From Ramazzottius varieornatus (taxonomy: Eukaryota > Animalia > Tardigrada): 64,000 nucleotides of DNA. The position numbers and the translations under genes are program-made. Below the pieces are notes generated by a model, which was not told the origin of the DNA, did no database searches, and was given only the letters and a program-made list of their open reading frames with translations. Positions 39,594-62,039 of this stretch are shown in pieces (within the stretch, counting starts at the first letter, position 1; each line of letters begins with the position of its first letter). Location of the stretch: the NCBI GenBank assembly GCA_001949185.1, contig BDGG01000002.1, positions 3,779,826-3,843,825 on the forward strand, in the 5' to 3' direction.

Positions 39594-40371
39594 CATTAGC
39601 CTTGAAATATCTGATCTGCATTGTCTGTTCATATCACTCGATACTTCTCCTGCGAACTGTTTTTCGCTTTTCCTAGTTTTAGATCTTTTATCGTGTGATG
39701 AAATTAATACTTTTTCAAACTGAATAAGGTTCAAAGTAATTGGACTAATCTTGGTTATCGTCTGTACAGCAGAGCTTGGTGGACTGGACTGCTTACTGCG
39801 CGTATTACACTTCGGCGTTTGCTGCTTCAGGTACTCAACTTCTGTCCTCGGGACTTCATTTTAACGTCTTGATGCGGAGCCTCTCCTAACGAGATTTTAA
39901 TGTTGTAGACAGTGCACAGGAAGTATACGGCTGCTGTACGCTGTAATGTTTTCTGCTATCCAAATATTGCGCGATTGTAAACGGCGCCACGCGCAGTTGT
40001 TGGTTTGAGCGGCAGAGTACAATGGAAACCTGCTTCCGAGGTATCACTTACATTGTCGTGAATATGTAGCGGTTAAACAGGCATGTTGCCATAACGCAGT
40101 GTTGGCCGATCGGATCTGGAAGAATAGCCCAGGGTCGACTTGAAGACTTTGGAGGTTAGCCGCTTCTTTACGTAATTCCAACGCCGGGGATCGCCGGACC
40201 ATTCCGCAGCGCTGCTTCAGCACCATCTTGACAAGATGACTTCGGCTTGATATCGATACCGTAAAATAGCGTCCGTACTATTCGCACAAAAACTTCCTGC
40301 TTGTACATCCTGTTCTTTCCTTCGCTATCAAGTCGAACCAAATTGCACATAGTTATACCGATTACTTTGCA

Positions 40372-43300
40372 ATGAGTTACTGCGTTTACAAAATAATTTT
40401 TGTTTTACGCTTGGCTTTTCTTTTTGTGATCAATACCAGACAGGTGTGTATCCTCCTCGGATGCTCTGTTGTTCCGACAACTTTTGTAGCATTTTACCTA
40501 ATCAACCTTCAAGTAGCTGTTCAAGTCCTACTCTACTGCGCCACATGATCTAAATATTTCGGCTTTTCAGGTTTTCATGCTGAAAAGTGTGCAACAGCGT
40601 TCATTCTACATTCCACCTCCGTCTCCAATGCGGATTGCCGGCAGATCGGACAGCTCGTTCAACCAGCTCGAACCCTACCCGAGCGAAGTACCCAATCCAT
40701 CAAACTTCTCGTCGACAGTCTTCTACTCCCCACAGCCCTTCAACACCTTTTTCCCCTATGGCTACATCGTCAGCGCATCCGAAGAAGACCCCAACAACAT
40801 GTCCGCTCGCCAACAGTCCTTCACGGCCCCACCCGAGAACGGCAACTTCCCTGTTGCGGTTCGACCACACTCCCCTTCCGGCTACGGTCCAGCCATCAAT
40901 AACAGCGTCGGCAATTCGGGGCTATCAAGACCGCCACCTGTCTGCCCACAGCCGCTTTATACGGCTATTCTGCCGGAGCAGGCACCTGTTGGGACCTTTG
41001 TCCTAAGGCCGGAAGCTACGGGTCAAGGTAAGTTCAAACCCAGCATGATTCTGCCAGCAACTGCCATGCCGTGAGAATTTCATGGTTACTTCATTAGGGC
41101 TACAATGGACAATCGCGGACACGGCTTTTGAGCGTTTCACGATCGATCCAAATACCGGGGATATCTCAGTAATTGGTAGTCTGAGAAGAAAAACGAGAGC
41201 GGCCTTGGAATTCAAAATACGCGCAACGGATCAATTTGGTTTGGTAAGAAAAGGAAGCGACTGACAGCTCTCTCTCTCTCACCTACTGTCTTCTACCAAT
41301 TTTGTCTTAAAAATATCACGGCCATTTGGCTGTGGATATCAGGGTGGCTTGTTTTAGTGGTGCGATGCAATTGTGAGGATCAACGTTGTTCCTGACGCAT
41401 CCTTTGCCGCCTCTCCAACAACTCGCAACTCGCCTCCGTACTTTGTGAACAGCTACTACTATTTCACGCTGAACTGTGGGCAATTTGGTCCTCAACGCGT
41501 TGGCTCGGTGCTTGCCACAGACCTGGATCCCAATCAATCCCTCACCTACCAAATCACTGGATCGAAGTACCTACTTCAAGATGCTCATCTGTCCGCATGA
41601 AGTGTTTTGGCAGTAACTAGAATGAATTATCTTGTAGCGAGTTTACAATCGACGCGAGTGGGAATATTCAGACGACGGAGACCCTACAGCCATTGTCGTC
41701 CCCACAGCGCACCTTCACAGTGATCGCAACAGACAACGGTACTCCCTCGCAAACAGGAAGTACCGTTGTGACCGTGACGCTTACTGGCAATTGCGGTGAG
41801 ACGCCCAATGGCGTGCCGCCGGCAACTCAGCCACCGAGTTCCAACACGCCGCCAGTGTTCGGGCAAGCTTCTTATACTCTGACTGCCTCATGCCGTGTCA
41901 GTGGAGCCTTTGCTGGAATGGTAACCGCTACGGACTATGAAAGGACCCCCATCACCTACTCCATGACTGGAACACAGTACGTCAAACAAACCAACCTTGG
42001 GCTTGCAAAACAGACTTTCATCTTAGGCCGATCCATTTTTGAACACTAGAACTTCTTAGAGAGCGTATGCCATACCATTTACCTAGTACAGTTTCCATTG
42101 TTTCGCTTAGGGAATTTTCCGTCAGTCCGTCCAGCGGAGAAGTCCGCGTGCAAGGAGCATTAGGTGATGCAAATCCCAGAAGCTTTTACGTCATTGCAAC
42201 AGGTGATACCCAAAGATATGCTCTCTTCCGTATAATAACGATGGAAAAAGCTATCACTGCTACTACCTACGTACTTTACCGACCATATCTGCTACAGACA
42301 GCGGATCGCCGGCGCTTTCTGCTCGTGTACCGGTGACCGTCACCATGGTCAACTGCTCACCCCTCAATAATCCGCCCACATTTGGACAGTCGACCTACCT
42401 TTTCACCATACCGTGCAGCAGCCAACCTGGTACCGTCATTAGCGTCATACAGGCATTTGATACGGAAGGAAATCAAGTTTCTTACACAACTGCTGGAACA
42501 CAGTAAGTCAAGCTACCGCCAGCACCCCGGCCATTTCCAGGCTCATCTGTCTCCTTTTCCCTTCCCATCAGGGAGTTCAGAGTGGATGCAAACAGCGGGT
42601 CTTTAAGCCTGCTAGCACCACTGCAAAATTCCGGGCTTCGGCAGTTCACCATTATCGTAACGGACAACGGCCAGCCCAGCATGTCCTCTACTACGGGTAT
42701 CAGTGTCGTCGTGACTGGCAACTGTGGCCAAGAACCCATCACAGCTGGTACATTGCCGCCGCCGCCGCCAATCACACAGCCGCCCGCCGCATTCCCACCG
42801 GTGTACACCCAACCAGCATACACGCAACCGCTTTACCCCCAACCTCCAGCTACGATACCATCCTACACCCAACCGCCATATTACACGCAGCCAGTGATCT
42901 ATGTGCCACCGGTGACTGCTCCATCGCCAACAGTACCACCACCGTACTATACACAGCCGCCTTATACACAAGCCCCGCCGTACCAGCCGCCACCGGCCAC
43001 TGCGCCACCAGCTGTTTACACTTATCCGCCAACTTTGCCCGGTAAAAACAACGGCTCTTGTGAATCTCACTGCCGTAGGGCAGGCTCAGATCACTGTACG
43101 GCACCTTACCCCTCGCTGTCTTGCAGCCACAGTTCCGACGGTACCGCCACCCCGACCACCCGTGTTCTCGCAACAGTCCTATCAGTTTGTTGTGCCCTGT
43201 GCGGTTCTGAATGGGACCTACACACAAATCGGATCCCTTCAAGTAAGACTAAAAAAAATTTACAACGTTCTTAGCCGCCTTGGTAATGATTATGCTTTAT

Positions 43301-46300
43301 TTCTAGGCTGTGGACCCGGGGGGTTCTTCGGTCACATATCTGGTTATCAGTGGCGCTCCGTAAGTTCCGCGACATTGATGATCCGGGACCGGTCATACTC
43401 CACTTGTCAACGGTAATTCTTGTTCTAGAGGATTCGATGTGGGCTTCTCGACGGGAAATATTGTCTCAGTTTCGCCAATCATCGACACGGGACCTCGTCA
43501 GATCGTTGTGGTAGCGAGAAGTAAGCTATCGTGTCCTTTTTTCCGTGTAACAGAAAATCACCGACATTTTTTGTCAACAGCCGGTAGCACTCCTCCAACT
43601 ACAGCTACCACTACCATCCAGATTAATGTCATTGGGCCCTGTTCCATCCCGCCTAGCTTCACATCACCTCCACCATACCAGCCGCCACCACTCTACGTCA
43701 CACCGTCGCCCCCGTACTATCCAACTCCAGCACCGGTACCATACACCCAACCAACATACCCGCCACCGGCCTACACACTTCCGCCACCGACCCAGCCATC
43801 CTATACGCCAGCACCATACATTCCACCCTCCACGCCCTCTCCGTCCACCTACGTCTACACCCAGCCACCCACTCCAGCTCCGCCCGCCTACCAACCTCCG
43901 AGGTTCAACCAAAACAGTTACTCATTCCTAATGACATGTCCCTTGAGCGTCGGCCAGCTCGTTGGAGTTGTGCAGGTGCGTTATCTGGCACATATTTCGA
44001 CCAGAAACCTCGATGATCATTGACTTCGTTTAGGCCACCGGCTCGCTGCCTGTCATGATCTACTTCCTAACGGGTACCCAGGACTTTACCGTATCCAGCG
44101 TGGGCGAGATTCGGACAAGTCGTCCGTTGAGCGGGCCCACAGTGGCCTCCTTCCAAGTCATCGCCACCGATAGTCAGTCGAGAACCACTAGCGCGCAGGT
44201 GCAGATATCCGTCCCCTTGTGCCAGACCGCTCCACCCCAACCGCCGAAGTTTCCTCAGTCTTCCTATGCACTCAACGTCATCTGTCCCACTTCGCCCAAC
44301 GTCCTTATAGGAACTATCACGGTATGGTCTACCTTGCCACCTTAGTTCAGTACATCATTGCAGTGTGACCAAGAATTCTTGCTGTTTTTTTCCAGGCCCA
44401 GTATTCTCAGCCGCAGTCCTTAGTGTACAACGTGCTCAACACCAAGTAAGCCAGGATCGGATTCTGGGTTGCCCGAATGCCGCACCAAAGGTGGCTCATA
44501 TCTGTATTGGTCTTTATTCGCAGTCAGTTTACGATCGATAACTTCGGAGAAGTACGAAGCACGGGTCTGCTCACATCTGGAACTTATTCCTTTACCGTGA
44601 CCGTAACAGGTATCTGTTAACTGCACATTCACATAGGCATCACCGAACGTCAATCTTGGGTGAACTTTACAGACCGGACGAATCCTTCTCTTGCGGCTTC
44701 CGCTCAAAGTACCGTGACTGTTGGTCCTTGTGCGACGCAGCCACCACCTGTTACTTTCGCGCCTCCGACTTATCCAGTGACGTATCGGCCGACATATCCA
44801 CCACCAACTCAGATTTACTACACTTACCCACCTCAAGTCACCTCACCACCTTTCGGCCCAACGCCGGCTCCGTCACCCGTCACCGGTCAGCCATTGCCCA
44901 ACCTGCCACCATATTTCTCGGTGTCTTCCTACAGCTTCACCGTAGTCTGCAACAGTCAACCAGGAACTGCCATCGGCTCCGTCTACGTAAGAAACTAACC
45001 CCAGTAACTTTTGATGACAACAAAATTCTACTTTTTTTTTCTTGTGTTCAAAGGCATTCGACGATGTCTCGGCCGTGACGTACTCGATTAGAAGCCCTTC
45101 GTTCACGATAAACGCAGCGACGGGCGACATCCAGACAGCGACTGTGATCCAGTCCAGCTCTCCGATATATTTCACGGTGGTTGCTTCGGATTCTACTGGG
45201 TTGTAAGTTGCGATACCATTCACTCTGCTTTTTCAGCTTCAAAGAACTGTTTCTGACATTGGGTTATCTTGTATAGGTCTGCCAGTGCGAATGTGGAAGT
45301 CTCGGTCACCGGATGTAACCAACAGCCCGGCCAGCAAATCCGCCAGACCCAGCCAATCATTACCAGTTCGACCTCCAACACCGTCACCAACTGTGATCAG
45401 TCCACCAGCATGGTGCCACCCGGAGCCGCTGTGGGGACCTTGACGGCCAGCAGCTCATTTGGAAGCGCTGGTCGGCTGCAGTATTCGATAACCGATCGAC
45501 GCTTCACTATCAGTCCGTATACCGGTCAGCTTTTTGCGGGAAGTACACTGGGTAAGACCGCGTATCTCTTTGCCCGAATGGCTATGCCGGGGAAATGCTG
45601 TATTTTCAGACAGCGGAAGTTACGTCTTTCTGGTCATAGTGGCCGACCTCGCTGCACCACAGTGTACGAATAACGCACCTACAAGAGGCCGATTTCCAAT
45701 GCGGCTTATTTTTCATAATAATTTGTTTCTTGCTCCGCAGCGGTCACCACTGCAACCTTCACAGTTGTGGGTAAGTGAGTGTTGCGCTCGTTACATTTGT
45801 TCCTTTGCCCGTCGGCTCAATACAGTGAGAGGTTCTTTAGTTGACTGCGCTTCTATCGGGTACCGTCCTTGTAATCCCCCGTATGTGGAAACCTCGGTTA
45901 GCGAAAGGTACGTGTCAGCCAACAAAAGATTGGTTTCATAGACCGGTTTCCATAAACCAGCGGCATATTATGCGAGGTGCATTGTACGCTAGCTTTCATG
46001 CTTCATCGCACAATCTGGAAGGAGAATTCTTAGTGCGCACAACGTTCTGCTAGTATTTCATGTTTTACAGTGCTCCGGTTGGTACTTTAGTCATGTCGCT
46101 TCAAGTAAGTGCACCAACTTCAACGGTAATGTTACTACCCTAACATAAAGTATTACAGAATGCCGGCTTGGGATTGTCGTCCTCCCGCCCATACTCCGTC
46201 CCTTACAATAATCTGCCACCTGGTGGTACGCTGAACTCCATCGAGTTCCCGTCATACTCCTCTCCCCAGAACCTACAGTCGTATGGTGGTCCCTACACCA

Positions 46301-47185
46301 GCTATCGTCGGTCACTTCGACACACGGGAAAAGAGGAGATTGAAAGTCGTCGCACCAAAAAATACCGACAGCTGTCGTATGCTTCTTTGAACCAAATGTC
46401 GGCTAGCGCAGTTGGTACCAACTTTCTCATACAGAAGACCAGTGGACCTGGCGTCTTCCGCGTCGACCCAAACAGGTACGACATATTCCCAAAGTTGCTA
46501 GATCACTTTCGGTCACTCACTTCCGGTTAATTGTTCCATCAGTGGGCAGATTACGGTAATGCAGCCACTGGACCGTGAGCGCAAGGACAGTTACATGCTG
46601 AAAGTTCGCAGTTCAATCGGAAACCAGTATTGTGTGACGAAAGTTGGCATCGAGATAACGGATATTAACGACAACACGCCCATCTTCTCCAACCAAAGCT
46701 ACGTTTTCACAGCCCCCTGTAATTCCGCCTCAGCGTTTGTGGGCGCTGTAACGGTAAAGTTTTCCCTCACACCAAATGTATTCTTGGTTTTTCGGATAAT
46801 GTCCCCACTCGCAGGCAAGGGACTTTGACTCTGGACTACGGGGCTTCATCCATTACAGCATACCAACGCCCAACAACATGTAAGAGAAGGCTTGGTCTCG
46901 GTGTACTGTACATATCTGATATCGGACACGGTTGGATTGCGAATTTTTTGGTAGGTACTTTGGGATAGACTGCTTTACTGGAGAGATACGTCTAAGGAGG
47001 CAGATCGCAGCAAACGTTCTACCCGTTACGCTTACGGTAGGCAATAGAATCAAACTTGCTGTTTTTCCTATTGATGTGTTGAAGCGGGCTTTCTGTTGCA
47101 GATACAGGCGGAGAACCCCACAAGTCCGCCTTTATCGACCATTACTGCAGTGACAGTGAATCCCGGGCTGAATTGTTACGCATGA
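40372..47185 (+). CDS. Secreted protein with ~11 atypical cadherin-like repeats and Pro/Tyr/Thr-rich extensin-like linkers; no TM segment
   Basis: A signal-like first exon 'MSYCVYKIIFVLRLAFLFVINTRQ' (40372-40443) splices in phase to 'VFMLKSV'. Cadherin motifs include 'ATDLD', 'FTIDPNTGDI', 'VIATDNGTP', 'LDRERKDSY...DINDNTPIF'. The protein ends 'VTVNPGLNCYA*' at 47183-47185. Confidence 0.85.
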
Positions 47186-53849: not shown

Positions 53850-55589
53850 TTAGTCTCCCTGCAGAATTAGTTCAAGGTTCTTTTGCGAGTCCCCATCTTT
53901 GCTGGTAACTTCAGCCCCGTCTTCGCTAAGTTTCTGCGCTTTTGTGAAGTAAGTATTCTCGGATAGCGATGAATCCCACTGCGCGACTTCATCGATAAGC
54001 CCGGTCAGTTCTTCCTGACTCACAATCCGTTTTGCTGCCATGTCTACGTTTTTAATCTTTTTCCCGCATCCCAGTCTTTCCACCATCTCAGCATTACCGT
54101 GCTGGTCGGCACACATTGGCTATAAATTGAAGCAGCAGGATTAGTACTCTGGCTCATCCAAAAAGCTAAAAGGTTTCACCGAACAGAGCCACCTATGATG
54201 CAGAAAGTACAAGATTGTTCCCTCGAGTGGCTCACCCTTCCACCCAGTAATAATGAAGATGTGGGCCACTTGAGACAAAGATCCTGTATATGTTGTTTGC
54301 CCAGACAAATGACAGCCAAATGATCGGAACCTACCCATGCGAGTATTGGTACGCCAAAAGATATTCCTTCCAACGTGCTGTTCCACCCGCAGTGACTGAC
54401 AAACAGCCGTGTCGCTTTGTGCTTCAGGATGGTTGTTTGGGGAGCCCATGCCAAAATCAAAAACGGACATCCGGTTGTTTGAAATTGGCTTTTAATTGCT
54501 TCTTTAACGCCTTGTGACAAAGGTGCCTGGTACGCCGATTTGAGCGCCCAGATGAATGGTCGATTCATGGCTCTCAGTGTCTCACAGAGTATCAGAAGTT
54601 GATTCTCCTTCGGTGCTAGCATCGAACCAAAGGACACGTAAACAACGGATCTTTCCTTTTGCTTGTCAAGCCATCTCGATACTTGAGAGGTTTCTGAGTG
54701 CTTCATTGGATCGTCAGGGCTATGAGCAACAACTGGTCCGACACATCCAATCTTCAGCTTAGTGAACTCCGGGCACAGCTTTAGGACTTCTCCGCGGATG
54801 TTCGGTTCGAGCCCGGTGAACGAGTTGAACATAAGACCGGTAGCTTTGGCCAAAGACTTACGGATCTTCAAGTACTTATCTTTGAGACCTGCTGGAAGTT
54901 GGTCGGTCTTCATTTCTCCCTTAACATCTTCGTTACCGAGGGCTGTCTGTTCAGTTACTCCAAGGTACTGCATAGCCATGAAACCAGCCATGGGTGAGAA
55001 CCCAAAGATCGGTATGTTTTGCTCCACTGCGGCGGTAAATGGCGCGTCGCAGATAAAAACATCGCTGATGATGACGTCGACGGAAGGAATATCAGCAATT
55101 CGGCGGGAGTAGCCATTTCTCGTACTTTTGACAGGCAAGCTGGATATCAAGTCTCTGATCGCAACACTTAATCTGTTGGAAACGAGTACAAGATCATCGG
55201 CGGACAAGCATTCGTCATGCGAACTCTGGATTCCATCTTTCAGGAGAAATAAACGTATCCTCTTCTCGTCAGCCGGTACGACGACATTCCGCTTGTACAT
55301 ATCATCCATCAGGCTCTCCGATACAGCGAACGTCACTCTGTGGCCGGCAGCTACGATCCGTCGGGAAAGTTCCAGTAGAGGGGTGACATGTCCAAAAGCG
55401 GGATACGAGAAGACCAAGAAGTGTTTCGCGTCTTGGTCGCTTGATACAATATTGAGCGATGGAGGCTGGAAGAGAATTTTTGGTCGTTACTTAGTAAAAG
55501 CTTTTTTTCGAAGAGAAGGAAACGAAATCAACACTCACGTCCGATCTTGGATGACCTACGTACAAGGTCGTCTGGATGAAGGTATGCAT
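53850..55589 (-). CDS. Plant-type soluble family-1 UDP-glycosyltransferase, paralog A
   Basis: Exons 55589-55560 (tentative), 55465-54335 and 54119-53850. Catalytic-His motif 'YPAFGHVTP', 'YVSFGS', and PSPG box 'WAPQTTILKHKATRLFVSHCGWNSTLEGISFGVPILAW|PMCADQ'. No signal peptide and no C-terminal TM. Confidence 0.93.
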
Positions 55590-55827
55590 GATGCTAGCTG
55601 GAGGTACCGTACTAGGACAAACTCTTCGTTACGGTTTGTGGAAACTTCAGAAAATTCAAAGTAGTTGTCCATAAAGAGCGAAAGGCAAGACTAGTGCGGT
55701 CATAGTTGTAGGCCTCTGTTATATACAGGCCTCGCTCGCTGCTTGTTTTTTTTTGTTTTGGCATCCTGGCAAGCTTTATTGTTAGGCTCTTCCAAGTAGT
55801 ACGAAAACAACTTCCATTATTGTCATG

Positions 55828-55973
55828 TGACTCAGCTGTTTGGCGAGAACGAGCAGAAAGATTCAAGCAGAAGACTGAGACACTTTTTTCTGAAGTCTGA
55901 ACCAGGCATGTGTGGTTCTCACGACCCGGAACAAGTTTTGATCATACTACAAAGTCTAGTTCGTAATGAGTCA
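55828..55973. promoter_or_regulatory. Candidate ARE/AP-1 sites upstream of UGT-A
   Basis: TGACTCAGC at 55828-55836 and TGAGTCA at 55967-55973, about 240-385 bp upstream of the putative ATG. Confidence 0.35.
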
Positions 55974-56105
55974 AGCGCACTACCTGGTAATGTGGCAATG
56001 TAGCCATTTTGGTATTAGATGAGGTGTGTGCACGCAAAACGCTCAGCACCAAGTTAATAACATGCATATGGAGGAGACGCTCTTACAAGGGAATTATGGC
56101 CGTTC

Positions 56106-56180
56106 CTACGTCACGAGCTACGTCACGAGCTACGTCACGAGCTACGTCACGAGCTACGTCACGAGCTACGTCACGAGCTA
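56106..56180. repeat. Perfect tandem 12-mer (CTACGTCACGAG) x6
   Basis: Directly visible. Confidence 0.95.
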
Positions 56181-59100
56181 TGCGTAGGCATCTTAGGCTT
56201 CATGACGTGGCCGTGACGTATATGAGCAAAGTTGCAGGCTGAGCAACGTAAGACCTCGCTCCTCGTAGCGATGACGCATTAACAGCACGCTGACGTAACA
56301 TTCTTTCATTGGAGGTTTTGATAAACATCTGATCTACCTGATGTATCGGCAGGATGCCATTCCGCCTGCACTTGCGTAATGTAGCACTTCGTACTGTACA
56401 ATTCGGACAAACAGCGAGATGAAAAAAGCCTGTCAGCTGATCATCTGGGTGTCAATCAAAGCTTTTAGGCTGCGCTACGTAACTTAAGTCAACCCTAGTT
56501 TATAACCCGACACGTGACTGATGACGTCACGGCTAGGAACGAACATTAGAAAGATGCTTGAAAAAGACGAGCTTGGACAATCAAATTTCACTGTGATATT
56601 CACGTGCTTGATTGAATCGGGTTAACCGTTTATGCTAGTTAACTGTTAACCGTTAACCCAGCACCTACCCCGTTCGTGACGTCTCCAGTCACGTATGCAA
56701 AAGCTGGTTGTCAACCAGGGTTTTTGACTCCCGTTTAATTATCGTTTTTGACGCCCATTATCGACGGTTGATTTTTTGGTACACTGTACTATTTAGGGAG
56801 CACGTTTTGATAACACATGCCTGTACATAACGGTTTCTCAGACCGGCGGCCGATAGTTCTGCGTAAAAATTTACGTCGGGATTCTTCGTTCGGAAAGAAA
56901 GTTCGTGGGTCGTCTCGTTCAGTACGTAGTATACGGATTGAGGCTGCTGGTGCTAGTCTAGGGTCTAGCCAACCTGCAGGATTTGAGTCTATTTACCAAT
57001 GTCAGAGACCGTAAACTTTAAACACGCAGCTGTTTGTGGTGGGAGATTGTGCCATTTTTCCGTCAATCTCGGAAAAAGCATCTAATTATTCATACAGCCC
57101 GTACCCATCACGTCCAGCGATACTCCGATTGGTTTTCTGCCGGACAAAAATCTACTCAAGCAGAAAAGAGATATCTGTACCTTCGATACTGGTGTCTTTA
57201 GATTAAAATCTGGAAGGAGTGGGTCGGTGGGAAAATCAAAACACGCAGCAACAGAACGACATGAATTAGGAAAGAAGTAAAGCAAGCTAGCTGCGAAGGC
57301 TGTGAAGGAAGAGGAGGCGGTCCGTCTCCGACTATAATGATAGGAGCTGCATCGAAATCTAACCCCTTCATTCCTGGTACTACCCTAATGCGAGGTGAGC
57401 CGAGTTATATCGAAGGCGACGTCGGTTTATTTTGAAACCACTGGCAGTAAACTAGCGAATGGACCTGGTATAACAACTGTAAACGCACGTGTGTACGCGT
57501 ACGTTTGCAAACCTTAAGAACTTTCAGAGAAGATGAGAGTGGAGAAGGGGAGAAGGTAGAGGTCCATCCATGAACTTTGACGACCAAGCGTGGTCACGAA
57601 ATTGCAGCTACGCGCGGCGTTCTCGACTTATCGTCGACGTAGGGAAGGTAGCAGTCACTGCGCCAGTTCCCTTGACGTTTCAAGAAAGCTGAGGAGATCC
57701 CGGTGGTGGGCGCCATAGGTGGCGCCACCATAGCGAAAGGAATGGAGTACGATGCGAGTCACATCACTACCGGACCAGCGGAGCGTTTTTCAAACTCCCT
57801 TTGTGAAGAGCGGAGGTGTAAGGGGTCTCCGTTGATGCTTGTGGTGACAGGAGAGAACAGGCGTGGATGAGGAGCAACGTTTCGGATTCGACAGCAGGGC
57901 AGAGAGTTCGCTCGGAGTTTGGGCAGCTGGACCTGATGGCGATTGTCGGCGGAATGGTTTGTACGAAGGCGGACCTTCATACACAGTGACCAGCTTGGCC
58001 GGTCTTGCTCGCACGCAGTCCGACCCACCGGGCTACGCCGGAAGAAATACCGTAGAATTTCTTAGTCATACGGTTTGGCCGTGGCCTTGTTGGTGTGACG
58101 GGCATACCCGTTCCTCTACCCCTCTCTTTCTGCCGGTCTTTCTGCCTGTATAAATACCAGGCGCGGTACTAGATGACAACGCCCGTTTACAGAGATTAAA
58201 ATCACAAAAACCGTGGCAAGAATTTGAATTACTGTTGAAAGCCGCATTTGAATTCATCGTAAGAAAGAGATAATCTGGTCAAGGTGAGGTACCAGACATT
58301 ACTTCTACGCGAGGGATTTTGATCAGTCGTAATTGCAGTTGAAATCGGAAGAGTCATGTGGCAAAAACACTGGCGGGAATACCAGCAGCAGTGGTGGACG
58401 TGAAGTCTTGCATTGGCCAAATAGTCGACTTCATAGTGGTTCGTTCCAACACTATGATCAGCACCCTGGTGGAAGTGGGTTGTACGTAGGTTGCCGTTGT
58501 CGGTACGGAGCGGTTGCCCAACCAAAGAACCTGTTGAGTAAGCCCACTTAGATATGATTTGCGCTTGCACACCAGCTGGCGATTCCACAACGAAATTCAA
58601 TTAATACTGTGAAAACTTACCGACGGAGTCGGGATTATCGAGTTGAAGCCTTACAGTCGAGACATGACCGAGACAAGGCAATTGTCCGAAAGACCTGACT
58701 GGGTCAGAACACGTCCCTCAATCACCGGCAGCTGTTCTATCAAAACGCTCATCGCAAGTAGCTTCCGGGAACCAGGGGCACAAAGCTACAAATCCGTTCT
58801 AAACACCTTGAGTTAACACCTTGAGCACGGGGCGGGAAACTCACTTTCCCGGCGCACACTCATTTGTGCGTAGCGAGTTTCCAGTTTACCTTTTGCTCCC
58901 CGTTTTTTTCCGTTTGCCCGGACAATCAACCCTTCTTGAAACTAAAACTAGCGGCCACTGGACACTGGCTCTGAAAACCTGTGTGGAATTTTTTTCCTCT
59001 TTTAACGGGATTTCGGCGTAGCCAGCAAATTAGTTTCCAGCCAGGCTCTCAGTTAGTACAGAGCCATCAAAATAATTGTTGCGCGAGCCCAAACATTTTA

Positions 59101-60226
59101 GCATCTTTTGACAGTTTCAGATTCGTGGAAAGATCTGCCCAGTGGTCATTAAAATAACTTTGAAGCCTGGCCGTTTTGAGTTGGCAGGTGGCGCACTCTA
59201 CATCATATTCCAAAAATTTGGCCAATCGATGAGGTAGTGATTGGTCTAATTTGGTACCGCCGCCAAGTTTTAACCAGTCAAAACAAGGCGAAAGTGACTT
59301 TCCCGCATCGTATTCTGAAAGCACGAAATCGCGCAGTGCTCAAGGTGTTAATTGTCTTGACCGTGTGGTCCTTTTAAACTTTCGGCATTGCTTCCGGGTC
59401 CATCTGCTTGCGAATGTCGTTGCCATCGGCAAGTGGCGCCTCCGCAGAGTTTATGAGCCAGCCGTTACCGAGAACACGGCCACTTGAACGTTCTTACCAG
59501 GACGGGAATGTCTTTACTGGTCAAATCTTTGACCAAGACATCGACAACTGGCATGTCGAGCTGACTGGGAGGAGGAAGTTGCAAGATGAAGTTTTTGGCT
59601 GTGTCGCACATTTTATTCGTGGAGTAAAACATTGTTTCGGACGATATGTCCGCATCAAAGGTGTTGCGCCGGATACCGTCCTTCAATCCAGTCCGAGGAA
59701 GCGAATGCTGTCTTCGTCAGACGGCGAGATCGATCATCTTGCAAGTGAGCATGCATGCCTTCTGCAAGGTTTTCCGAAGCCTTGTCACGGGTACGTAACG
59801 ATGCGTCACTTTGACCATGGACGATCTGTTGATTGCTTGATTGAAAGGTTCCTGGGGTTGTTCACCAGCGCGCTTCGTAACAGCCTCGAACATCGCCCGT
59901 TGGACAACTGCCACCACATGATCGCGAAACGCCAGGAGATACGTGATATGGCCAAATCAGGGTCACGAGAGTGACGAGGACCACGACAGGGTGATTGGAC
60001 ATGTATAGAACATTCTGGGGTCTATCTTTGGCTGAGGATAACACATCTTACCTTCATTAAAAGTGGCTGGATTGGTATGAACTGAATCCACTCGTATGAC
60101 ACCGTAAAGGGTGAATCTTTGAAACTGACACGACATTCGCTGCGAGGTGCGATTTTACTGAAATGTTTTGCCAGTAAGAAGAAAAGTTAACTGAGGCCCA
60201 AACCCGTGTCGTAAAAAACCCCGCAA

Positions 60227-60349
60227 TACTGTATTCCCCAGAAAATTTCGCGCAGTCACGTGACAGGCTTATAAATGTTGTTAATAGCCCTCTGGGACAT
60301 TTTATGGGCCTGTCACGTCACTGGGCGAAACTTTCGAGGGAATACAGTA
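60227..60349. mobile_element. Foldback MITE with ~50-bp inverted arms and flanking TA
   Basis: TA-CTGTATTCCC..GAAA.TTTCGC.CAGT.ACGTGACAGGC..ATAAATG / CATTTAT..GCCTGTCACGT.ACTG.GCGAAA.TTTC..GGGAATACAG-TA. Confidence 0.8.
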
Positions 60350-60571
60350 ACTCCACGGCCTAAATAAAAACTGCCAATGAATCCGACATCGAAGCAGGTC
60401 AATACAGCTAGCTAACTTAGGATGTGGCGTTTACTCACTCCGGCAACCCACTTGCACTTTAGCAAAAGATGACGGCGCGGTTCTCCAAAAATGTATCCAG
60501 TTTAAGTATCTTTACTGCTAAGTAATTCGCGGAAACATTAGATTGCATTAGATTGCCAACATTGCATAACA

Positions 60572-62039
60572 TTACATTGCCTGCTTCTTAGGCGATACAT
60601 CTAAAAGATATTTGAAAGTTTCCGCAGAATTTCCCCCTTCGCTAATTGCCGCCATAGCGGCTTGGCCGAGGTTTTGTGCCGTCATAAAGAATGAGTTCTC
60701 CATTAGAGGTGTGTTCCACTGCGCCACTTGATCGATGATGTCCGTCAGTTCTTCGCGACCTACGATTCGTTCGCCCATCATGTTAACCATGGCGAGTTTT
60801 TTCCCGCATCCAATAGCAGAAACCAGCTCGGCGTTTCCGTGTTGATCGCCCAGCATCGGCTGAAATAGAAACAAAATCAGAATTAATTTCATGATCAAAA
60901 GCGTTGCTTTGGTCAGTCGGTATCACCCAAGCGACGATGGGAACTCCACAAGAGATGCCTTCCAGCGTACTATTCCATCCGCAATGGCTAACAAAGACGC
61001 GAACGGCTTTGTGCTTTAGGACCGCCTTTTGAGGAGCCCACGGTACAATAAGGTACGGCTTGTTAGGGGAGTCAAACTCAGGCTTGCTAGCTTCTTGTAC
61101 TTCCGCGGGCAGGAACTTTTGCTGCGCGGGTCTGAGGGACCAGATGAATGGCCGTTTCAACCCGACCAAAGTGTCAGTGATCTCTTTTATTTGCGCAACA
61201 TTCGCGACAGCCACCGTACCGAAGGAGAAATACACGACCGAGCGTTCCGGCTGAGCATCCAGCCATTTCAAGATTTGCTTGGTCTCTCTATAATGTTGGT
61301 CATCGTAGATACTTCCATTAGGTAGGATTGGTCCGATGAACCTGATTTTAAGGTCTTTGAAGTCGGGTCGCGTTTGAACTACAGTTTCGCAGAACGTCGG
61401 CTCCAGCGCTTCAAAGGAGTGGATGAGCACCCCGTCCGTTTGCAATAAAACCTTGTTGAATCGAACGAGCCCGTCCTTCCAGGCCGCGGCCACGGCTATC
61501 ATGTTGGGATCAGCTTCCTTTATAATATCATAATCTTCGCTCGAAGTCGGAGTATCCTCTTGGACCCTGAACATCTGCGCGGCAATATAACCGGCCACCG
61601 GAGAGAATCCAAAACAGGTGATTCCGCTTCGTACAGCGGCCTCGAAAGGAACCGCCCCGAAAATAATGTCAGCGAGGATCACATCCACAGGTGGCATTTC
61701 GTGGTTGGATCCATCATTTTTACTTGAAAGAGGAAGGTTAGAAATGAAACCGTCCAAAAACGCGCAGCATCTGTCCGTTACATCGCACATCACATCAGTC
61801 GAAAAGTGCTCATCGAAGACGTGGCGTATTCCATCATTCAGGCCAACAAAATTGATGAGGGTTTCTTCCTGGGGTGTCATCATCTTCCGGGTCCGCATAT
61901 CTTTCAGCAGACTTTCCGATACAGCCAGACTTGCTTGGTGGCCTGTCGCGGCGATCTTGCGTGACAGTTCCAGCAAAGGAGTGATATGCCCGAAAGCTGG
62001 ATAAGGAAGTAGGAGAAAATGTTTTTTGGCTCCTCCCAT
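60572..62039 (-). CDS. Plant-type soluble family-1 UDP-glycosyltransferase, paralog B
   Basis: Exons 62039-60927 and 60859-60572. 'YPAFGHITP', 'YFSFGT', and PSPG 'WAPQKAVLKHKAVRVFVSHCGWNSTLEGISCGVPIVAW|PMLGDQ'. Confidence 0.95.

What the first reader, a model, noticed from the sequence alone, without database searches (positions are those of the whole stretch)
40372..47185. Secreted cadherin-like protein whose Ca2+ junction motifs appear replaced by a cysteine pair
Seen: in most of the ~11 repeats, the position after the A-strand 'F...Y.....' that normally holds the Ca-binding 'PE' holds Cys (YFTLNC, TLTASC, FTIPC, FVVPC, FLMTC, LNVIC, FTVVC, FTAPC). The G-strand end that normally reads DxNDN also ends in Cys (LTGNC, MVNC, VTGNC, IGPC, VPLC, VGPC, VTGC, VVDC, GLNC). 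LDRE is absent except in repeat 10, which keeps LDRE and DINDN. Established: PE, LDRE and DxNDN converge on the same inter-domain junction in cadherin EC domains. Inference: each repeat is stapled by a disulfide, giving a Ca2+-independent, membrane-free cadherin scaffold. This could be an undescribed extracellular structural protein class (cuticle, eggshell or adhesive) suited to low-Ca or desiccating conditions.
Basis: partly seen in the sequence, partly recalled or inferred. Interest (0 to 1): 0.85.

Follow-up and report, generated by a model that had tools for sequence, protein, structure and literature searches.

The report
Secreted tardigrade cadherin with cysteine-stapled repeats
This tardigrade gene encodes a secreted, anchor-less chain of 11 cadherin-type domains, nine of which have swapped their calcium-binding residues for a conserved pair of cysteines, and it belongs to a small uncharacterised tardigrade gene family.

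Summary
Window 40372-47185 (+) holds one intact 27-exon gene: all introns GT-AG (42-163 nt), 1587 aa, signal-peptide-like N-terminus, no transmembrane or GPI tail.

It encodes 11 cadherin EC repeats. Nine have Cys exactly at the column where 87% of about 5,550 other cadherin repeats have the Ca2+-ligand Glu, plus a second Cys just past strand G, inside the DxNDN-equivalent segment. R1 and R10 keep the Glu and carry a different Cys pair. Only the R10-R11 junction keeps a full Ca2+ motif set.

The Hypsibius exemplaris ortholog (OQV26221.1, auto-named 'Protocadherin Fat 4') is 55% identical, yet keeps 23 of 23 mature Cys and the same C-terminus.

Across 54 tardigrade repeats (this gene, its ortholog, one H. 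exemplaris paralog, four more loci in this genome), 45 have both Cys, 9 have neither and none has only one. That argues strongly for an intradomain disulfide, but no SG-SG distance could be measured.

The disulfide does not replace the junction. Repeats are separated by Pro/Thr-rich spacers of 5-115 aa, so the protein is beads on a string rather than a rigid rod. No evidence bears on a cuticle, eggshell or desiccation role.

The scan noted paralogs before (s1-795490, s1-806968). It is a new variant of a known kind.

The parts
40372..47185 (+). Whole gene: 27 coding exons, 1587 aa plus stop. Exons: 40372-40443, 40571-41027, 41098-41243, 41358-41566, 41638-41976, 42111-42202, 42298-42502, 42572-43041, 43127-43242, 43307-43359, 43429-43520, 43581-43975, 44034-44321, 44396-44445, 44524-44609, 44673-44986, 45054-45202, 45277-45551, 45610-45663, 45741-45770, 45841-45907, 46071-46108, 46151-46475, 46543-46753, 46815-46879, 46955-47036, 47102-47185.
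   Evidence: Splice scan and ortholog-guided choice of introns. The assembled CDS is 4764 nt with no internal stop, and all 26 introns are GT-AG, 42-163 nt. tblastn of ortholog P0112 covers 40913-47176.
40372..40443 (+). Exon 1: signal-peptide-like N-terminus (24 aa, hydrophobic core), spliced CAG|GTGTGT ... TTTTCAG| to 40571.
   Evidence: Sequence read. Kyte-Doolittle 19-residue window 2.02, the only hydrophobic segment in the protein. The ortholog also starts MSY... and has an A-x-A type signal peptide.
40571..40933 (+). Low-complexity Pro/Ser/Asn-rich N-terminal region (aa 25-145).
40934..41408 (+). Repeat R1 (aa 146-242). It keeps the 'PE' Glu and has no DxNDN. It carries a different Cys pair: Cys149 (40943-40945) before strand A and Cys227 (41361-41363) at the F-G loop / start of strand G.
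   Evidence: Both Cys are conserved in P0112.
41433..41803 (+). Repeat R2 (aa 251-350). Cys265 (41475-41477) lies at the Glu column and Cys347 (41792-41794) after strand G.
41849..42365 (+). Repeat R3 (aa 366-461). Cys380 (41891-41893) and Cys458 (42354-42356).
42372..42734 (+). Repeat R4 (aa 464-561). Cys478 (42414-42416) and Cys558 (42723-42725).
42735..43152 (+). Spacer R4-R5, 111 aa: 42 Pro, 17 Thr, 13 Tyr. Contains intron 43042-43126.
   Evidence: The ortholog has a spacer at the same place, but Phe-rich.
43153..43651 (+). Repeat R5 (aa 673-774). Cys688 (43198-43200) and Cys771 (43640-43642).
43652..43891 (+). Spacer R5-R6, 80 aa: 33 Pro, 12 Thr, 12 Tyr.
43892..44231 (+). Repeat R6 (aa 855-948). 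Cys870 (43937-43939) and Cys945 (44220-44222).
44238..44740 (+). Repeat R7 (aa 951-1046). Cys966 (44283-44285) and Cys1043 (44729-44731).
44741..44902 (+). Spacer R7-R8, 54 aa: 20 Pro, 9 Thr, 6 Tyr.
44903..45325 (+). Repeat R8 (aa 1101-1194). Cys1116 (44948-44950) and Cys1191 (45314-45316).
45350..45857 (+). Repeat R9 (aa 1203-1303). Cys1217 (45392-45394) and Cys1300 (45846-45848).
45864..46672 (+). Repeat R10 (aa 1306-1484), the canonical one. It keeps a Glu at the end of strand A (VSE), LDRE and DINDN. It has an insertion of about 90 aa in the B-C loop. Its Cys pair is of the R1 type: Cys1308 (45870-45872) and Cys1471 (46631-46633).
   Evidence: HMMER alignments to solved CELSR1 and protocadherin repeats.
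46673..47182 (+). Repeat R11 (aa 1485-1587). It keeps DxD (RDFD), which faces the R10 junction. Cys1500 (46718-46720) lies at the Glu column and Cys1585 (47174-47176) lies three residues before the stop. An extra, unpaired conserved Cys1539 is at 46971-46973.

Best explanation
The locus is a functional tardigrade gene for a secreted, non-anchored protein of 11 cadherin-fold domains.

In nine domains the acidic residues that form the Ca2+ site at the base of a cadherin repeat have been lost. These are the Glu after strand A, LDRE and DxNDN. Two Cys sit there instead, 2-3 residues past the ends of the neighbouring parallel strands A and G. They most likely form an intradomain disulfide that closes the base of the beta-sandwich without Ca2+. 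This is inferred, not measured.

The repeats no longer abut. They are joined by Pro/Thr-rich spacers of 5-115 aa, which are probably extended, flexible and perhaps O-glycosylated. The product is therefore a beads-on-a-string extracellular protein, not a Ca2+-rigidified rod.

R1 and R10 keep the Glu and use another conserved Cys pair. Only the R10-R11 junction can still bind Ca2+.

The gene belongs to a family found so far only in tardigrades: at least 5 loci in this genome and at least 2 proteins in H. exemplaris. Its biological role is not known. An extracellular matrix or surface-coat component is the most natural guess.
For: - Gene integrity: 27 exons, all GT-AG, no stops.
- Cadherin homology: partial Pfam hits on single exons. 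A profile of the exon units finds 17,030 proteins at E<=0.001, aligned over 2-98 of 99 positions. The ortholog scores Pfam Cadherin E 1.3e-60. PDB hits are all cadherins.
- Position of the first Cys: the column is Glu in 87% of canonical repeats and Cys in 9/10 repeats here. HMMER pairs the R11 Cys with the Glu of CELSR1 repeats.
- Position of the second Cys: the canonical repeats that reach the profile's tail (about 1,690) have Asp one column before the Cys column and Asn one column after it.
- Pairing: 30 repeats with both Cys, 8 with neither and 0 with one in three proteins (Fisher p 2e-8). In four more loci of this genome, 15 have both and 1 has neither.
- Conservation: 23/23 mature Cys are kept at 55% overall identity.
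- Recurrence elsewhere: outside tardigrades, 4 of the 9 repeats with Cys at the Glu column also have a tail Cys, against a background of 3.6% (p 2e-4).
- Secretion: the only hydrophobic segment is N-terminal. The protein and its ortholog end at the same place without an anchor.
- Fold and flexibility: an AlphaFold2 model of a two-repeat paralog ORF gives two 7-strand sandwiches (pLDDT about 70-86) and a linker below 50. The invariant Cys lie 2-3 residues after strands A and G. Foldseek top hits are all cadherin EC tandems.
Against: - No coordinates were available, so no Cys-Cys distance was measured. The folded sequence was a paralog, not this gene, because every repeat here is split by introns.
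- There is no transcript evidence.
- The signal peptide was judged by hydrophobicity only.
- The taxonomic range is poorly sampled. Only two tardigrade species were visible to the searches.
- There is no evidence on tissue, partners or function.
Confidence: 0.7

Rival explanations
1. The Cys residues serve mainly for inter-molecular cross-linking, building a covalent polymer as in cuticle or eggshell matrices, rather than stapling each domain internally.
For: The mature protein has an odd number of Cys (23). One conserved extra Cys lies in R11 at 46971-46973. The protein is secreted and has Tyr/Pro-rich spacers of the kind seen in cross-linked matrices.
Against: The two Cys strictly co-occur within the same repeat: 45 with both, 9 with neither, 0 with one. 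They sit beside each other at the ends of adjacent strands. That fits an intradomain pair. The spacer Tyr are Phe in the ortholog, so Tyr cross-linking is not conserved.
Confidence: 0.12
2. One reading: the disulfide replaces the Ca2+ junction and gives a rigid, Ca2+-independent cadherin rod.
For: The Cys occupy positions whose canonical residues converge on the inter-domain Ca2+ site. Some junctions are short, at 5-6 aa for R3-R4 and R6-R7.
Against: Both Cys belong to the same repeat, so they cannot tie neighbouring repeats together. Three junctions are 54-111 aa Pro-rich spacers. The linker of a modelled paralog pair has pLDDT below 50, and its tandem orientation does not match any solved cadherin pair (rmsd 9-20 A).
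Confidence: 0.1
3. It is an ordinary membrane cadherin whose transmembrane and cytoplasmic exons were missed.
For: The public name of the ortholog is 'Protocadherin Fat 4'. No RNA data were available here.
Against: The stop follows the last repeat directly. The independently annotated ortholog ends at the homologous residue. No hydrophobic segment lies beyond the N-terminus in this protein or P0112, and only two marginal mid-chain windows (score 1.65-1.68) appear in P0153. No EGF or laminin-G domains are found. No convincing hydrophobic exon lies in the 1.4 kb downstream.
Confidence: 0.05
4. It is a decaying or mis-assembled repeat array with no function.
For: Pfam scores of single exons are weak.
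Against: The reading frame is open through 27 exons with consensus splice sites. The ortholog is collinear at 55% identity with every mature Cys kept.
Confidence: 0.03

Closest known systems
Cadherin superfamily EC repeats (Pfam PF00028), FAT / Dachsous / CELSR-like branch
   Same: The repeat sequence signature is the same (PPxF...Y...GT...F.ID..TG.I...Y.L.V.A.D.G.P...V.I.V). The seven-strand fold is the same. There is one fully canonical Ca2+ junction, R10-R11.
   Different: Nine of 11 repeats lack the Glu, LDRE and DxNDN Ca2+ ligands and have a Cys pair instead. There are no transmembrane segment, cytoplasmic tail, EGF or laminin-G domains. Long Pro-rich spacers separate the repeats.
Cadherins with isolated Ca2+-free linkers (protocadherin-15, LI-cadherin; cited in PMC8691648 and PMC8427231)
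   Same: Loss of Ca2+ ligands at an EC-EC junction gives flexibility.
   Different: In those proteins one or two linkers in a membrane-anchored, otherwise canonical chain are affected, and no Cys pair compensates. Here nearly all junctions are affected, a disulfide-type pair appears in each repeat, and the protein is secreted.
Disulfide-bonded EC repeats: PCDH15 / CDHR5 EC1 (strand A to strand F) and PCDH24 EC2 F-G hairpin (PMC8691648)
   Same: These are precedents for a stabilising disulfide inside a cadherin repeat. The authors compare the CDHR5 bond with a Ca2+ site that closes the N-terminal strand.
   Different: The positions differ: the tip of EC1 (A-F) or the F-G hairpin, in single repeats. 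Here the pair joins the post-A and post-G segments at the base, at the Ca2+-ligand positions, and recurs through the chain.
Single repeats in sponge FAT-like cadherins: Oscarella lobularis XP_065827148.1 cluster and Sycon ciliatum XP_065182352.1
   Same: They have the same two positions: Cys at the Glu column and Cys at the x of DxNDN (…DC[SN]D…).
   Different: This is one repeat out of 19-28 scored repeats in proteins of about 3,400-5,000 aa, and the other Ca2+ ligands are kept. It is uncharacterised and probably arose independently.
H. exemplaris OQV26221.1 and OQV14701.1/OQV14702.1 ('putative Protocadherin Fat 4')
   Same: OQV26221.1 is the ortholog: 55% identity, collinear, same Cys. OQV14701.1 is a 2943-aa paralog with 10 repeats carrying Cys at the Glu column plus a tail Cys, 2 more with the first Cys one column later, a signal peptide and no clear anchor.
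   Different: The ortholog has about 200 extra N-terminal residues, including a further domain, and Phe-rich instead of Tyr-rich spacers. The FAT4 name is automatic and does not fit the architecture.

Membership tests
Cadherin superfamily (EC repeat, PF00028) | Sequence signature of the extracellular cadherin repeat | tested here: met
   Single exons give partial Pfam Cadherin hits, best E 7.8e-6. A profile of the exon units finds 17,030 proteins at E<=0.001, and the sampled and named ones are cadherins. The ortholog scores PF00028 at E 1.3e-60. PDB sequence hits are all cadherins.
Cadherin superfamily (EC repeat, PF00028) | Seven-strand Greek-key beta-sandwich fold | tested here: met
   Tested on a paralog ORF of the same genome, not on this gene, because its repeats are split by introns. 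AlphaFold2 gives two 7-strand domains with mean pLDDT 72.9. Foldseek top hits are all cadherin EC tandems at E about 1e-12.
Cadherin superfamily (EC repeat, PF00028) | Ca2+-binding motif set at each inter-repeat junction (Glu after strand A, DxD, LDRE, DxNDN) | tested here: not met
   The Glu column is Cys in 9 repeats. The LDRE Asp column is kept only in R10. DxNDN occurs only in R10. Only the R10-R11 junction is complete.
Classical cadherins / protocadherins (membrane adhesion receptors) | Single-pass transmembrane segment and cytoplasmic domain | tested here: not met
   There is no hydrophobic window beyond the N-terminal signal, either here or in the ortholog. Both end just after the last repeat.
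FAT4-type protocadherin (public name of the ortholog) | About 34 EC repeats followed by EGF-like and laminin-G domains, a transmembrane segment and a cytoplasmic tail (from general knowledge of FAT cadherins) | tested here: not met
   There are 11 repeats in 1587 aa. Pfam finds only cadherin-type models on the ortholog. There is no transmembrane segment.
PCDH15 / CDHR5-type EC1 disulfide | Cys in strand A paired with Cys in strand F at the tip of EC1 (PMC8691648) | tested here: not met
   Here the Cys lie 2-3 residues after strands A and G at the base of the repeat, and in nine repeats.
   The spacers are 37-41% Pro with Thr, Tyr and Gln (TQPP and PPxY units). No Ser-Pro4 repeats are seen. Tyr is replaced by Phe in the ortholog. 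The resemblance is compositional only.
Intradomain disulfide between the two Cys of each repeat | Cys sulfur atoms within bonding distance; oxidised in the native protein | not testable with these tools
   Structure prediction returns no coordinates. Support is indirect: co-occurrence of 45 with both, 9 with neither and 0 with one, conservation of 23/23, and adjacent parallel strands A and G.

The most novel reading that the evidence does not exclude
Tardigrades evolved a family of secreted matrix proteins by converting the cadherin repeat from a Ca2+-rigidified adhesion module into a Ca2+-independent, disulfide-stapled bead strung on proline-rich spacers. The family would be a structural component of cuticle, eggshell or another surface coat, and would keep its fold when free Ca2+ and water activity change during drying.
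Probability: 0.2. Interest if true: 0.75.

Novelty: new variant of a known kind. Interest (0 to 1): 0.55.

Why it matters
Cadherin repeats are the textbook case of a fold whose stability and stiffness depend on Ca2+. A natural family in which the Ca2+ site has been replaced repeat after repeat by a Cys pair would show a second way to stabilise this fold. It would also provide Ca2+-independent cadherin modules for biophysics and protein engineering.

It adds a so far uncharacterised secreted protein family to the tardigrade extracellular repertoire, where little is known at the molecular level.

It also corrects a misleading automatic name. The public 'Protocadherin Fat 4' label suggests a planar-polarity receptor, and this architecture does not fit that.

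Tried and rejected
- **RNA evidence.** No transcript evidence was obtained.
- **Profile search.** The 150 listed hits were almost all cadherins of 1,850-8,000 aa, ranked by repeat number. Only P0112 stood out, by score per repeat.
- **Exon query.** An exon-sized search (41639-41974) found nothing in its length band of 62-196 aa.
- **Paralog ORF query.** A search with a 1331-aa paralog ORF found only two weak bacterial cadherin-repeat hits. These blanks say little, because of the length bands and the candidate cap.
- **ESM Atlas.** It returned only generic cadherin clusters and holds no model.
- **First alignments.** Alignments of the exon units were spoiled by the Pro-rich spacers and by misplaced terminal Cys, so they were trimmed.
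- **Joined spliced protein.** It was built only inside scripts, from window coordinates, and compared locally with proteins already fetched. It was not handed to any database search or folding tool, so this gene's own repeats were not folded.
- **Literature lead.** g1112.t1 (Cadherin-86C-like, up after UVC; PMC9145152 supplement) is probably another gene. The plant-type UGTs that may be this window's neighbours are g6486/g6487, and g6481-g6485 are not in the part of the table that is held.
- **Poly(A) signal.** No AATAAA or ATTAAA lies within 500 nt after the stop. This is not informative.
Full report
**What is there**

The window is eukaryotic. The genome has 55.8 Mb in 200 contigs, and earlier notes of this scan concern tardigrade protectants. 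The window is G000:C2:3779826-3843825.

On the + strand between 40372 and 47185, the open frames are short and change frame every 100-400 nt. I enumerated GT-AG introns that keep the frame open. Where the choice was ambiguous, I took the combination that best matches the ortholog. This gave one model of 27 exons:
- The CDS is 4764 nt with no internal stop.
- All 26 introns are GT-AG and 42-163 nt long.
- The product is 1587 aa.
- The ATG at 40372 is the first in its frame after a stop at 40267.
- Exon 1 splices CAG|GTGTGT to the acceptor ending at 40570.

I assembled the joined protein only inside scripts, from window coordinates, and compared it locally with proteins the tools had already returned.

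**It is a cadherin**

- Single exons give partial Pfam Cadherin hits, the best at E 7.8e-6.
- A profile of nine exon units (second half of one repeat, junction, first half of the next; alignment A4) found 17,030 proteins at E<=0.001. The best 150 matched over almost its whole length, and the sampled and named ones are cadherins.
- Among the hits, P0112 stood out by score per repeat: 1687 aa, 12 stretches, 476 bits. It is OQV26221.1, 'putative Protocadherin Fat 4' of Hypsibius exemplaris.
- P0112 scores Pfam Cadherin at E 1.3e-60.
- tblastn places it collinearly on 40913-47176. Global identity to my model is 55%. It is the ortholog.
- Against solved structures, it matches only cadherins, with CELSR1 best at 2.4e-48.

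**The cysteine pattern**

I aligned the ten scorable repeats and built an HMM. I then aligned 5,916 repeat hits from the 269 fetched proteins plus this one. Of these, 4,954 repeats cover both regions.

The canonical consensus recovered this way is the textbook one: PPVF....Y...V.EN...GT.V..V.ATD.D.G...YSI.....F.ID..TG.I.....LD....Y.L.V.A.D.G.P.LS....V.V.VDAN.

| Feature | Canonical repeats | This protein |
|---|---|---|
| Column 15 (Ca2+-ligand Glu) | Glu in 87% | Cys in R2-R9 and R11; Glu in R1 |
| LDRE Asp column | Asp in 72% | kept only in R10 |
| DxNDN | in most | only in R10 |

HMMER's own alignments to CELSR1 pair the R11 Cys with that Glu.

The second Cys lies 1-3 residues after strand G. 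Of the canonical repeats, the roughly 1,690 that reach the profile's tail have Asp one column before this Cys column and Asn one column after it. The Cys therefore corresponds to the x of DxNDN.

Outside this protein and its ortholog, Cys at column 15 occurs in 19 of 4,934 repeats. Ten of those 19 are in a second H. exemplaris protein, P0153 (OQV14701.1).

VVDC) adds a ninth pair.

**Are the two cysteines a pair?**

- Co-occurrence in three proteins. In this protein, P0112 and P0153, 30 repeats have both Cys and 8 have neither. This counts Cys at column 15 or 16 for P0153. None has only one (Fisher p 2e-8).
- Paralog loci in this genome. A search of the window's own genome with P0112 found further loci. 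I fetched four of them. Their repeats are mostly not split by introns.
- Co-occurrence in those loci. Of 16 complete repeats, 15 have both Cys. The one that keeps the Glu has neither.
- Total: 45 with both, 9 with neither, 0 with one.
- Conservation. Between the orthologs, all 23 Cys of the mature protein are conserved against 55% overall identity.
- Recurrence outside tardigrades. The nine repeats with Cys at the Glu column are enriched for a tail Cys: 4 of 9 against 3.6% (p 2e-4). Two of the four are in sponge FAT-like cadherins, with the pattern D-C-[SN]-D. The same pair has therefore probably arisen more than once.
- Paralog model. I folded a two-repeat paralog ORF (L012:3796-4440:-) with six paralogous rows. 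It gave two seven-strand sandwiches, with most 10-residue blocks at pLDDT about 70-86.
- Cys placement in that model. The invariant Cys lie three residues after strand A and two after strand G in both repeats. The linker scored below 50.
- Structural neighbours. Foldseek's best PDB matches are all cadherin EC tandems at E about 1e-12. The large rmsd values reflect a different inter-domain arrangement.

In the cadherin fold, strands A and G are adjacent and parallel. This is established knowledge, not tested here. The two Cys therefore emerge side by side at the base of the domain.

A disulfide is the most economical reading. The modelled sequence is also a paralog.

1. The pair is intradomain. 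It can replace the Ca2+ ion as a clamp on the base of one repeat, but not the inter-domain junction.
   - The junctions are spacers of 5, 6, 11, 18, 54, 80 and 111 aa with up to 41% Pro.
   - The long spacers are at the same places in the ortholog. They are Tyr-rich here and Phe-rich there, so Tyr chemistry is not conserved.
2. R1 and R10 keep the Glu and carry another conserved pair. One Cys lies 5-6 residues before strand A and one at the F-G loop or start of strand G. The R1-type repeats of the paralog loci show the same pair.
3. R10 keeps the Glu, LDRE and DINDN, and R11 keeps DxD. One canonical Ca2+ junction therefore survives.
4. The gene is one member of a family, not a lone gene. This genome has at least five such loci, and H. 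exemplaris has at least two such proteins. The scan had already noted paralogs on other contigs (s1-795490, s1-806968) and the spacers of this gene (s1-792786).

**Secreted, not anchored**

- The only hydrophobic window is the N-terminal 24 aa.
- The ortholog has a classical signal peptide ending in A-x-A.
- Both proteins stop two to three residues after the last Cys. There is no hydrophobic tail, so neither a transmembrane segment nor a GPI signal is present.
- P0153 has no clear transmembrane segment either; two marginal mid-chain windows score 1.65-1.68.
- Nothing hydrophobic enough to be a transmembrane exon lies in the 1.4 kb downstream.

**Known or new?**

Ca2+-free linkers are known in protocadherin-15 and LI-cadherin. 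Single stabilising disulfides are known at the PCDH15/CDHR5 EC1 tip (A-F) and in the PCDH24 EC2 F-G hairpin. I found no description of a chain-wide replacement of the Ca2+ ligands by a Cys pair. I also found no paper that links tardigrades with this protein.

The ortholog is public but carries only an automatic FAT4 name. The architecture contradicts that name: 11 repeats, no EGF or laminin-G domains, and no transmembrane segment.

The taxonomic range is unresolved. The searches could see only two tardigrade species, and the blanks are weak evidence.

**Limits**

- No SG-SG distance was measured.
- No signal-peptide predictor was available.
- There are no data on function.

The suggestions of a cuticle, eggshell, adhesive or desiccation role remain untested speculation.

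**Verdict**

The locus is a real, intact gene for a secreted cadherin-repeat protein with disulfide-type Cys pairs in place of Ca2+ sites, and it belongs to a family found so far only in tardigrades. I rate it a new variant of a known kind, of moderate interest.

Noticed in passing
G000:C27:52-57 kb (+) (L009/L013); G000:C2:244-251 kb (-) (L012); G000:C3:2.58-2.60 Mb, both strands (L010/L014); G000:C3:4.72 Mb (+) (L007): These are paralogous loci in the same genome. Each starts with an R1-type repeat (Glu kept, Cys before strand A), followed by mostly intron-free repeats with the same Cys pair. One locus has a 1331-aa open frame. Three of the four ORFs tested pass Pfam Cadherin's threshold.
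   Followed up: partly
window 40943-40945 with 41361-41363 (R1); 45870-45872 with 46631-46633 (R10): The two repeats that keep the Ca2+-ligand Glu carry a second, different conserved Cys pair. One Cys lies before strand A and the other at the F-G loop or start of strand G. Some paralog repeats carry both pairs.
   Followed up: partly
window 46971-46973: An extra Cys in R11 (in the F.ID..TG motif) is conserved in the ortholog. It leaves the mature protein with an odd Cys count, so it may form an inter-chain disulfide.
   Followed up: no
window exon 46151-46475 (aa 1385-1389 of the model): A basic motif RRS[LV]RH is conserved with the ortholog, inside the insertion of about 90 aa in the R10 B-C loop. 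It looks like a minimal R-x-x-R convertase site. Cleavage there would separate the Cys-stapled array from the Ca2+-binding R10-R11 module.
   Followed up: no
window 42735-43152, 43652-43891, 44741-44902: The long spacers are at conserved positions but are Tyr-rich here (13, 12 and 6 Tyr) and Phe-rich in H. exemplaris (1, 3 and 1 Tyr; 10, 5 and 1 Phe). Aromatic-Pro periodicity seems to matter rather than Tyr itself.
   Followed up: partly
window 40444-40933 compared with P0112 residues 1-332: The H. exemplaris ortholog has about 200 more N-terminal residues, including a further cadherin-like domain. tblastn finds no counterpart in this window. Here the signal-peptide exon splices straight into the low-complexity region.
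   Followed up: no
P0067/P0272 (Oscarella lobularis), P0140 (Sycon ciliatum), P0016, P0025: Isolated repeats in FAT-like cadherins of about 3,400-5,000 aa from sponges, and in two unnamed proteins, carry Cys at the Glu column. In three of the four the second Cys is at the x of DxNDN; in P0025 it lies further along the tail. These are probably independent occurrences of the same pair.
   Followed up: partly
window 53850-62039 (tandem UGTs noted by the scan, s1-792768): The supplement of PMC9145152 lists two consecutive gene models, g6486 and g6487, as plant-type UDP-glycosyltransferases induced after UVC. They may be this window's UGT pair. The mapping was not verified.
   Followed up: no
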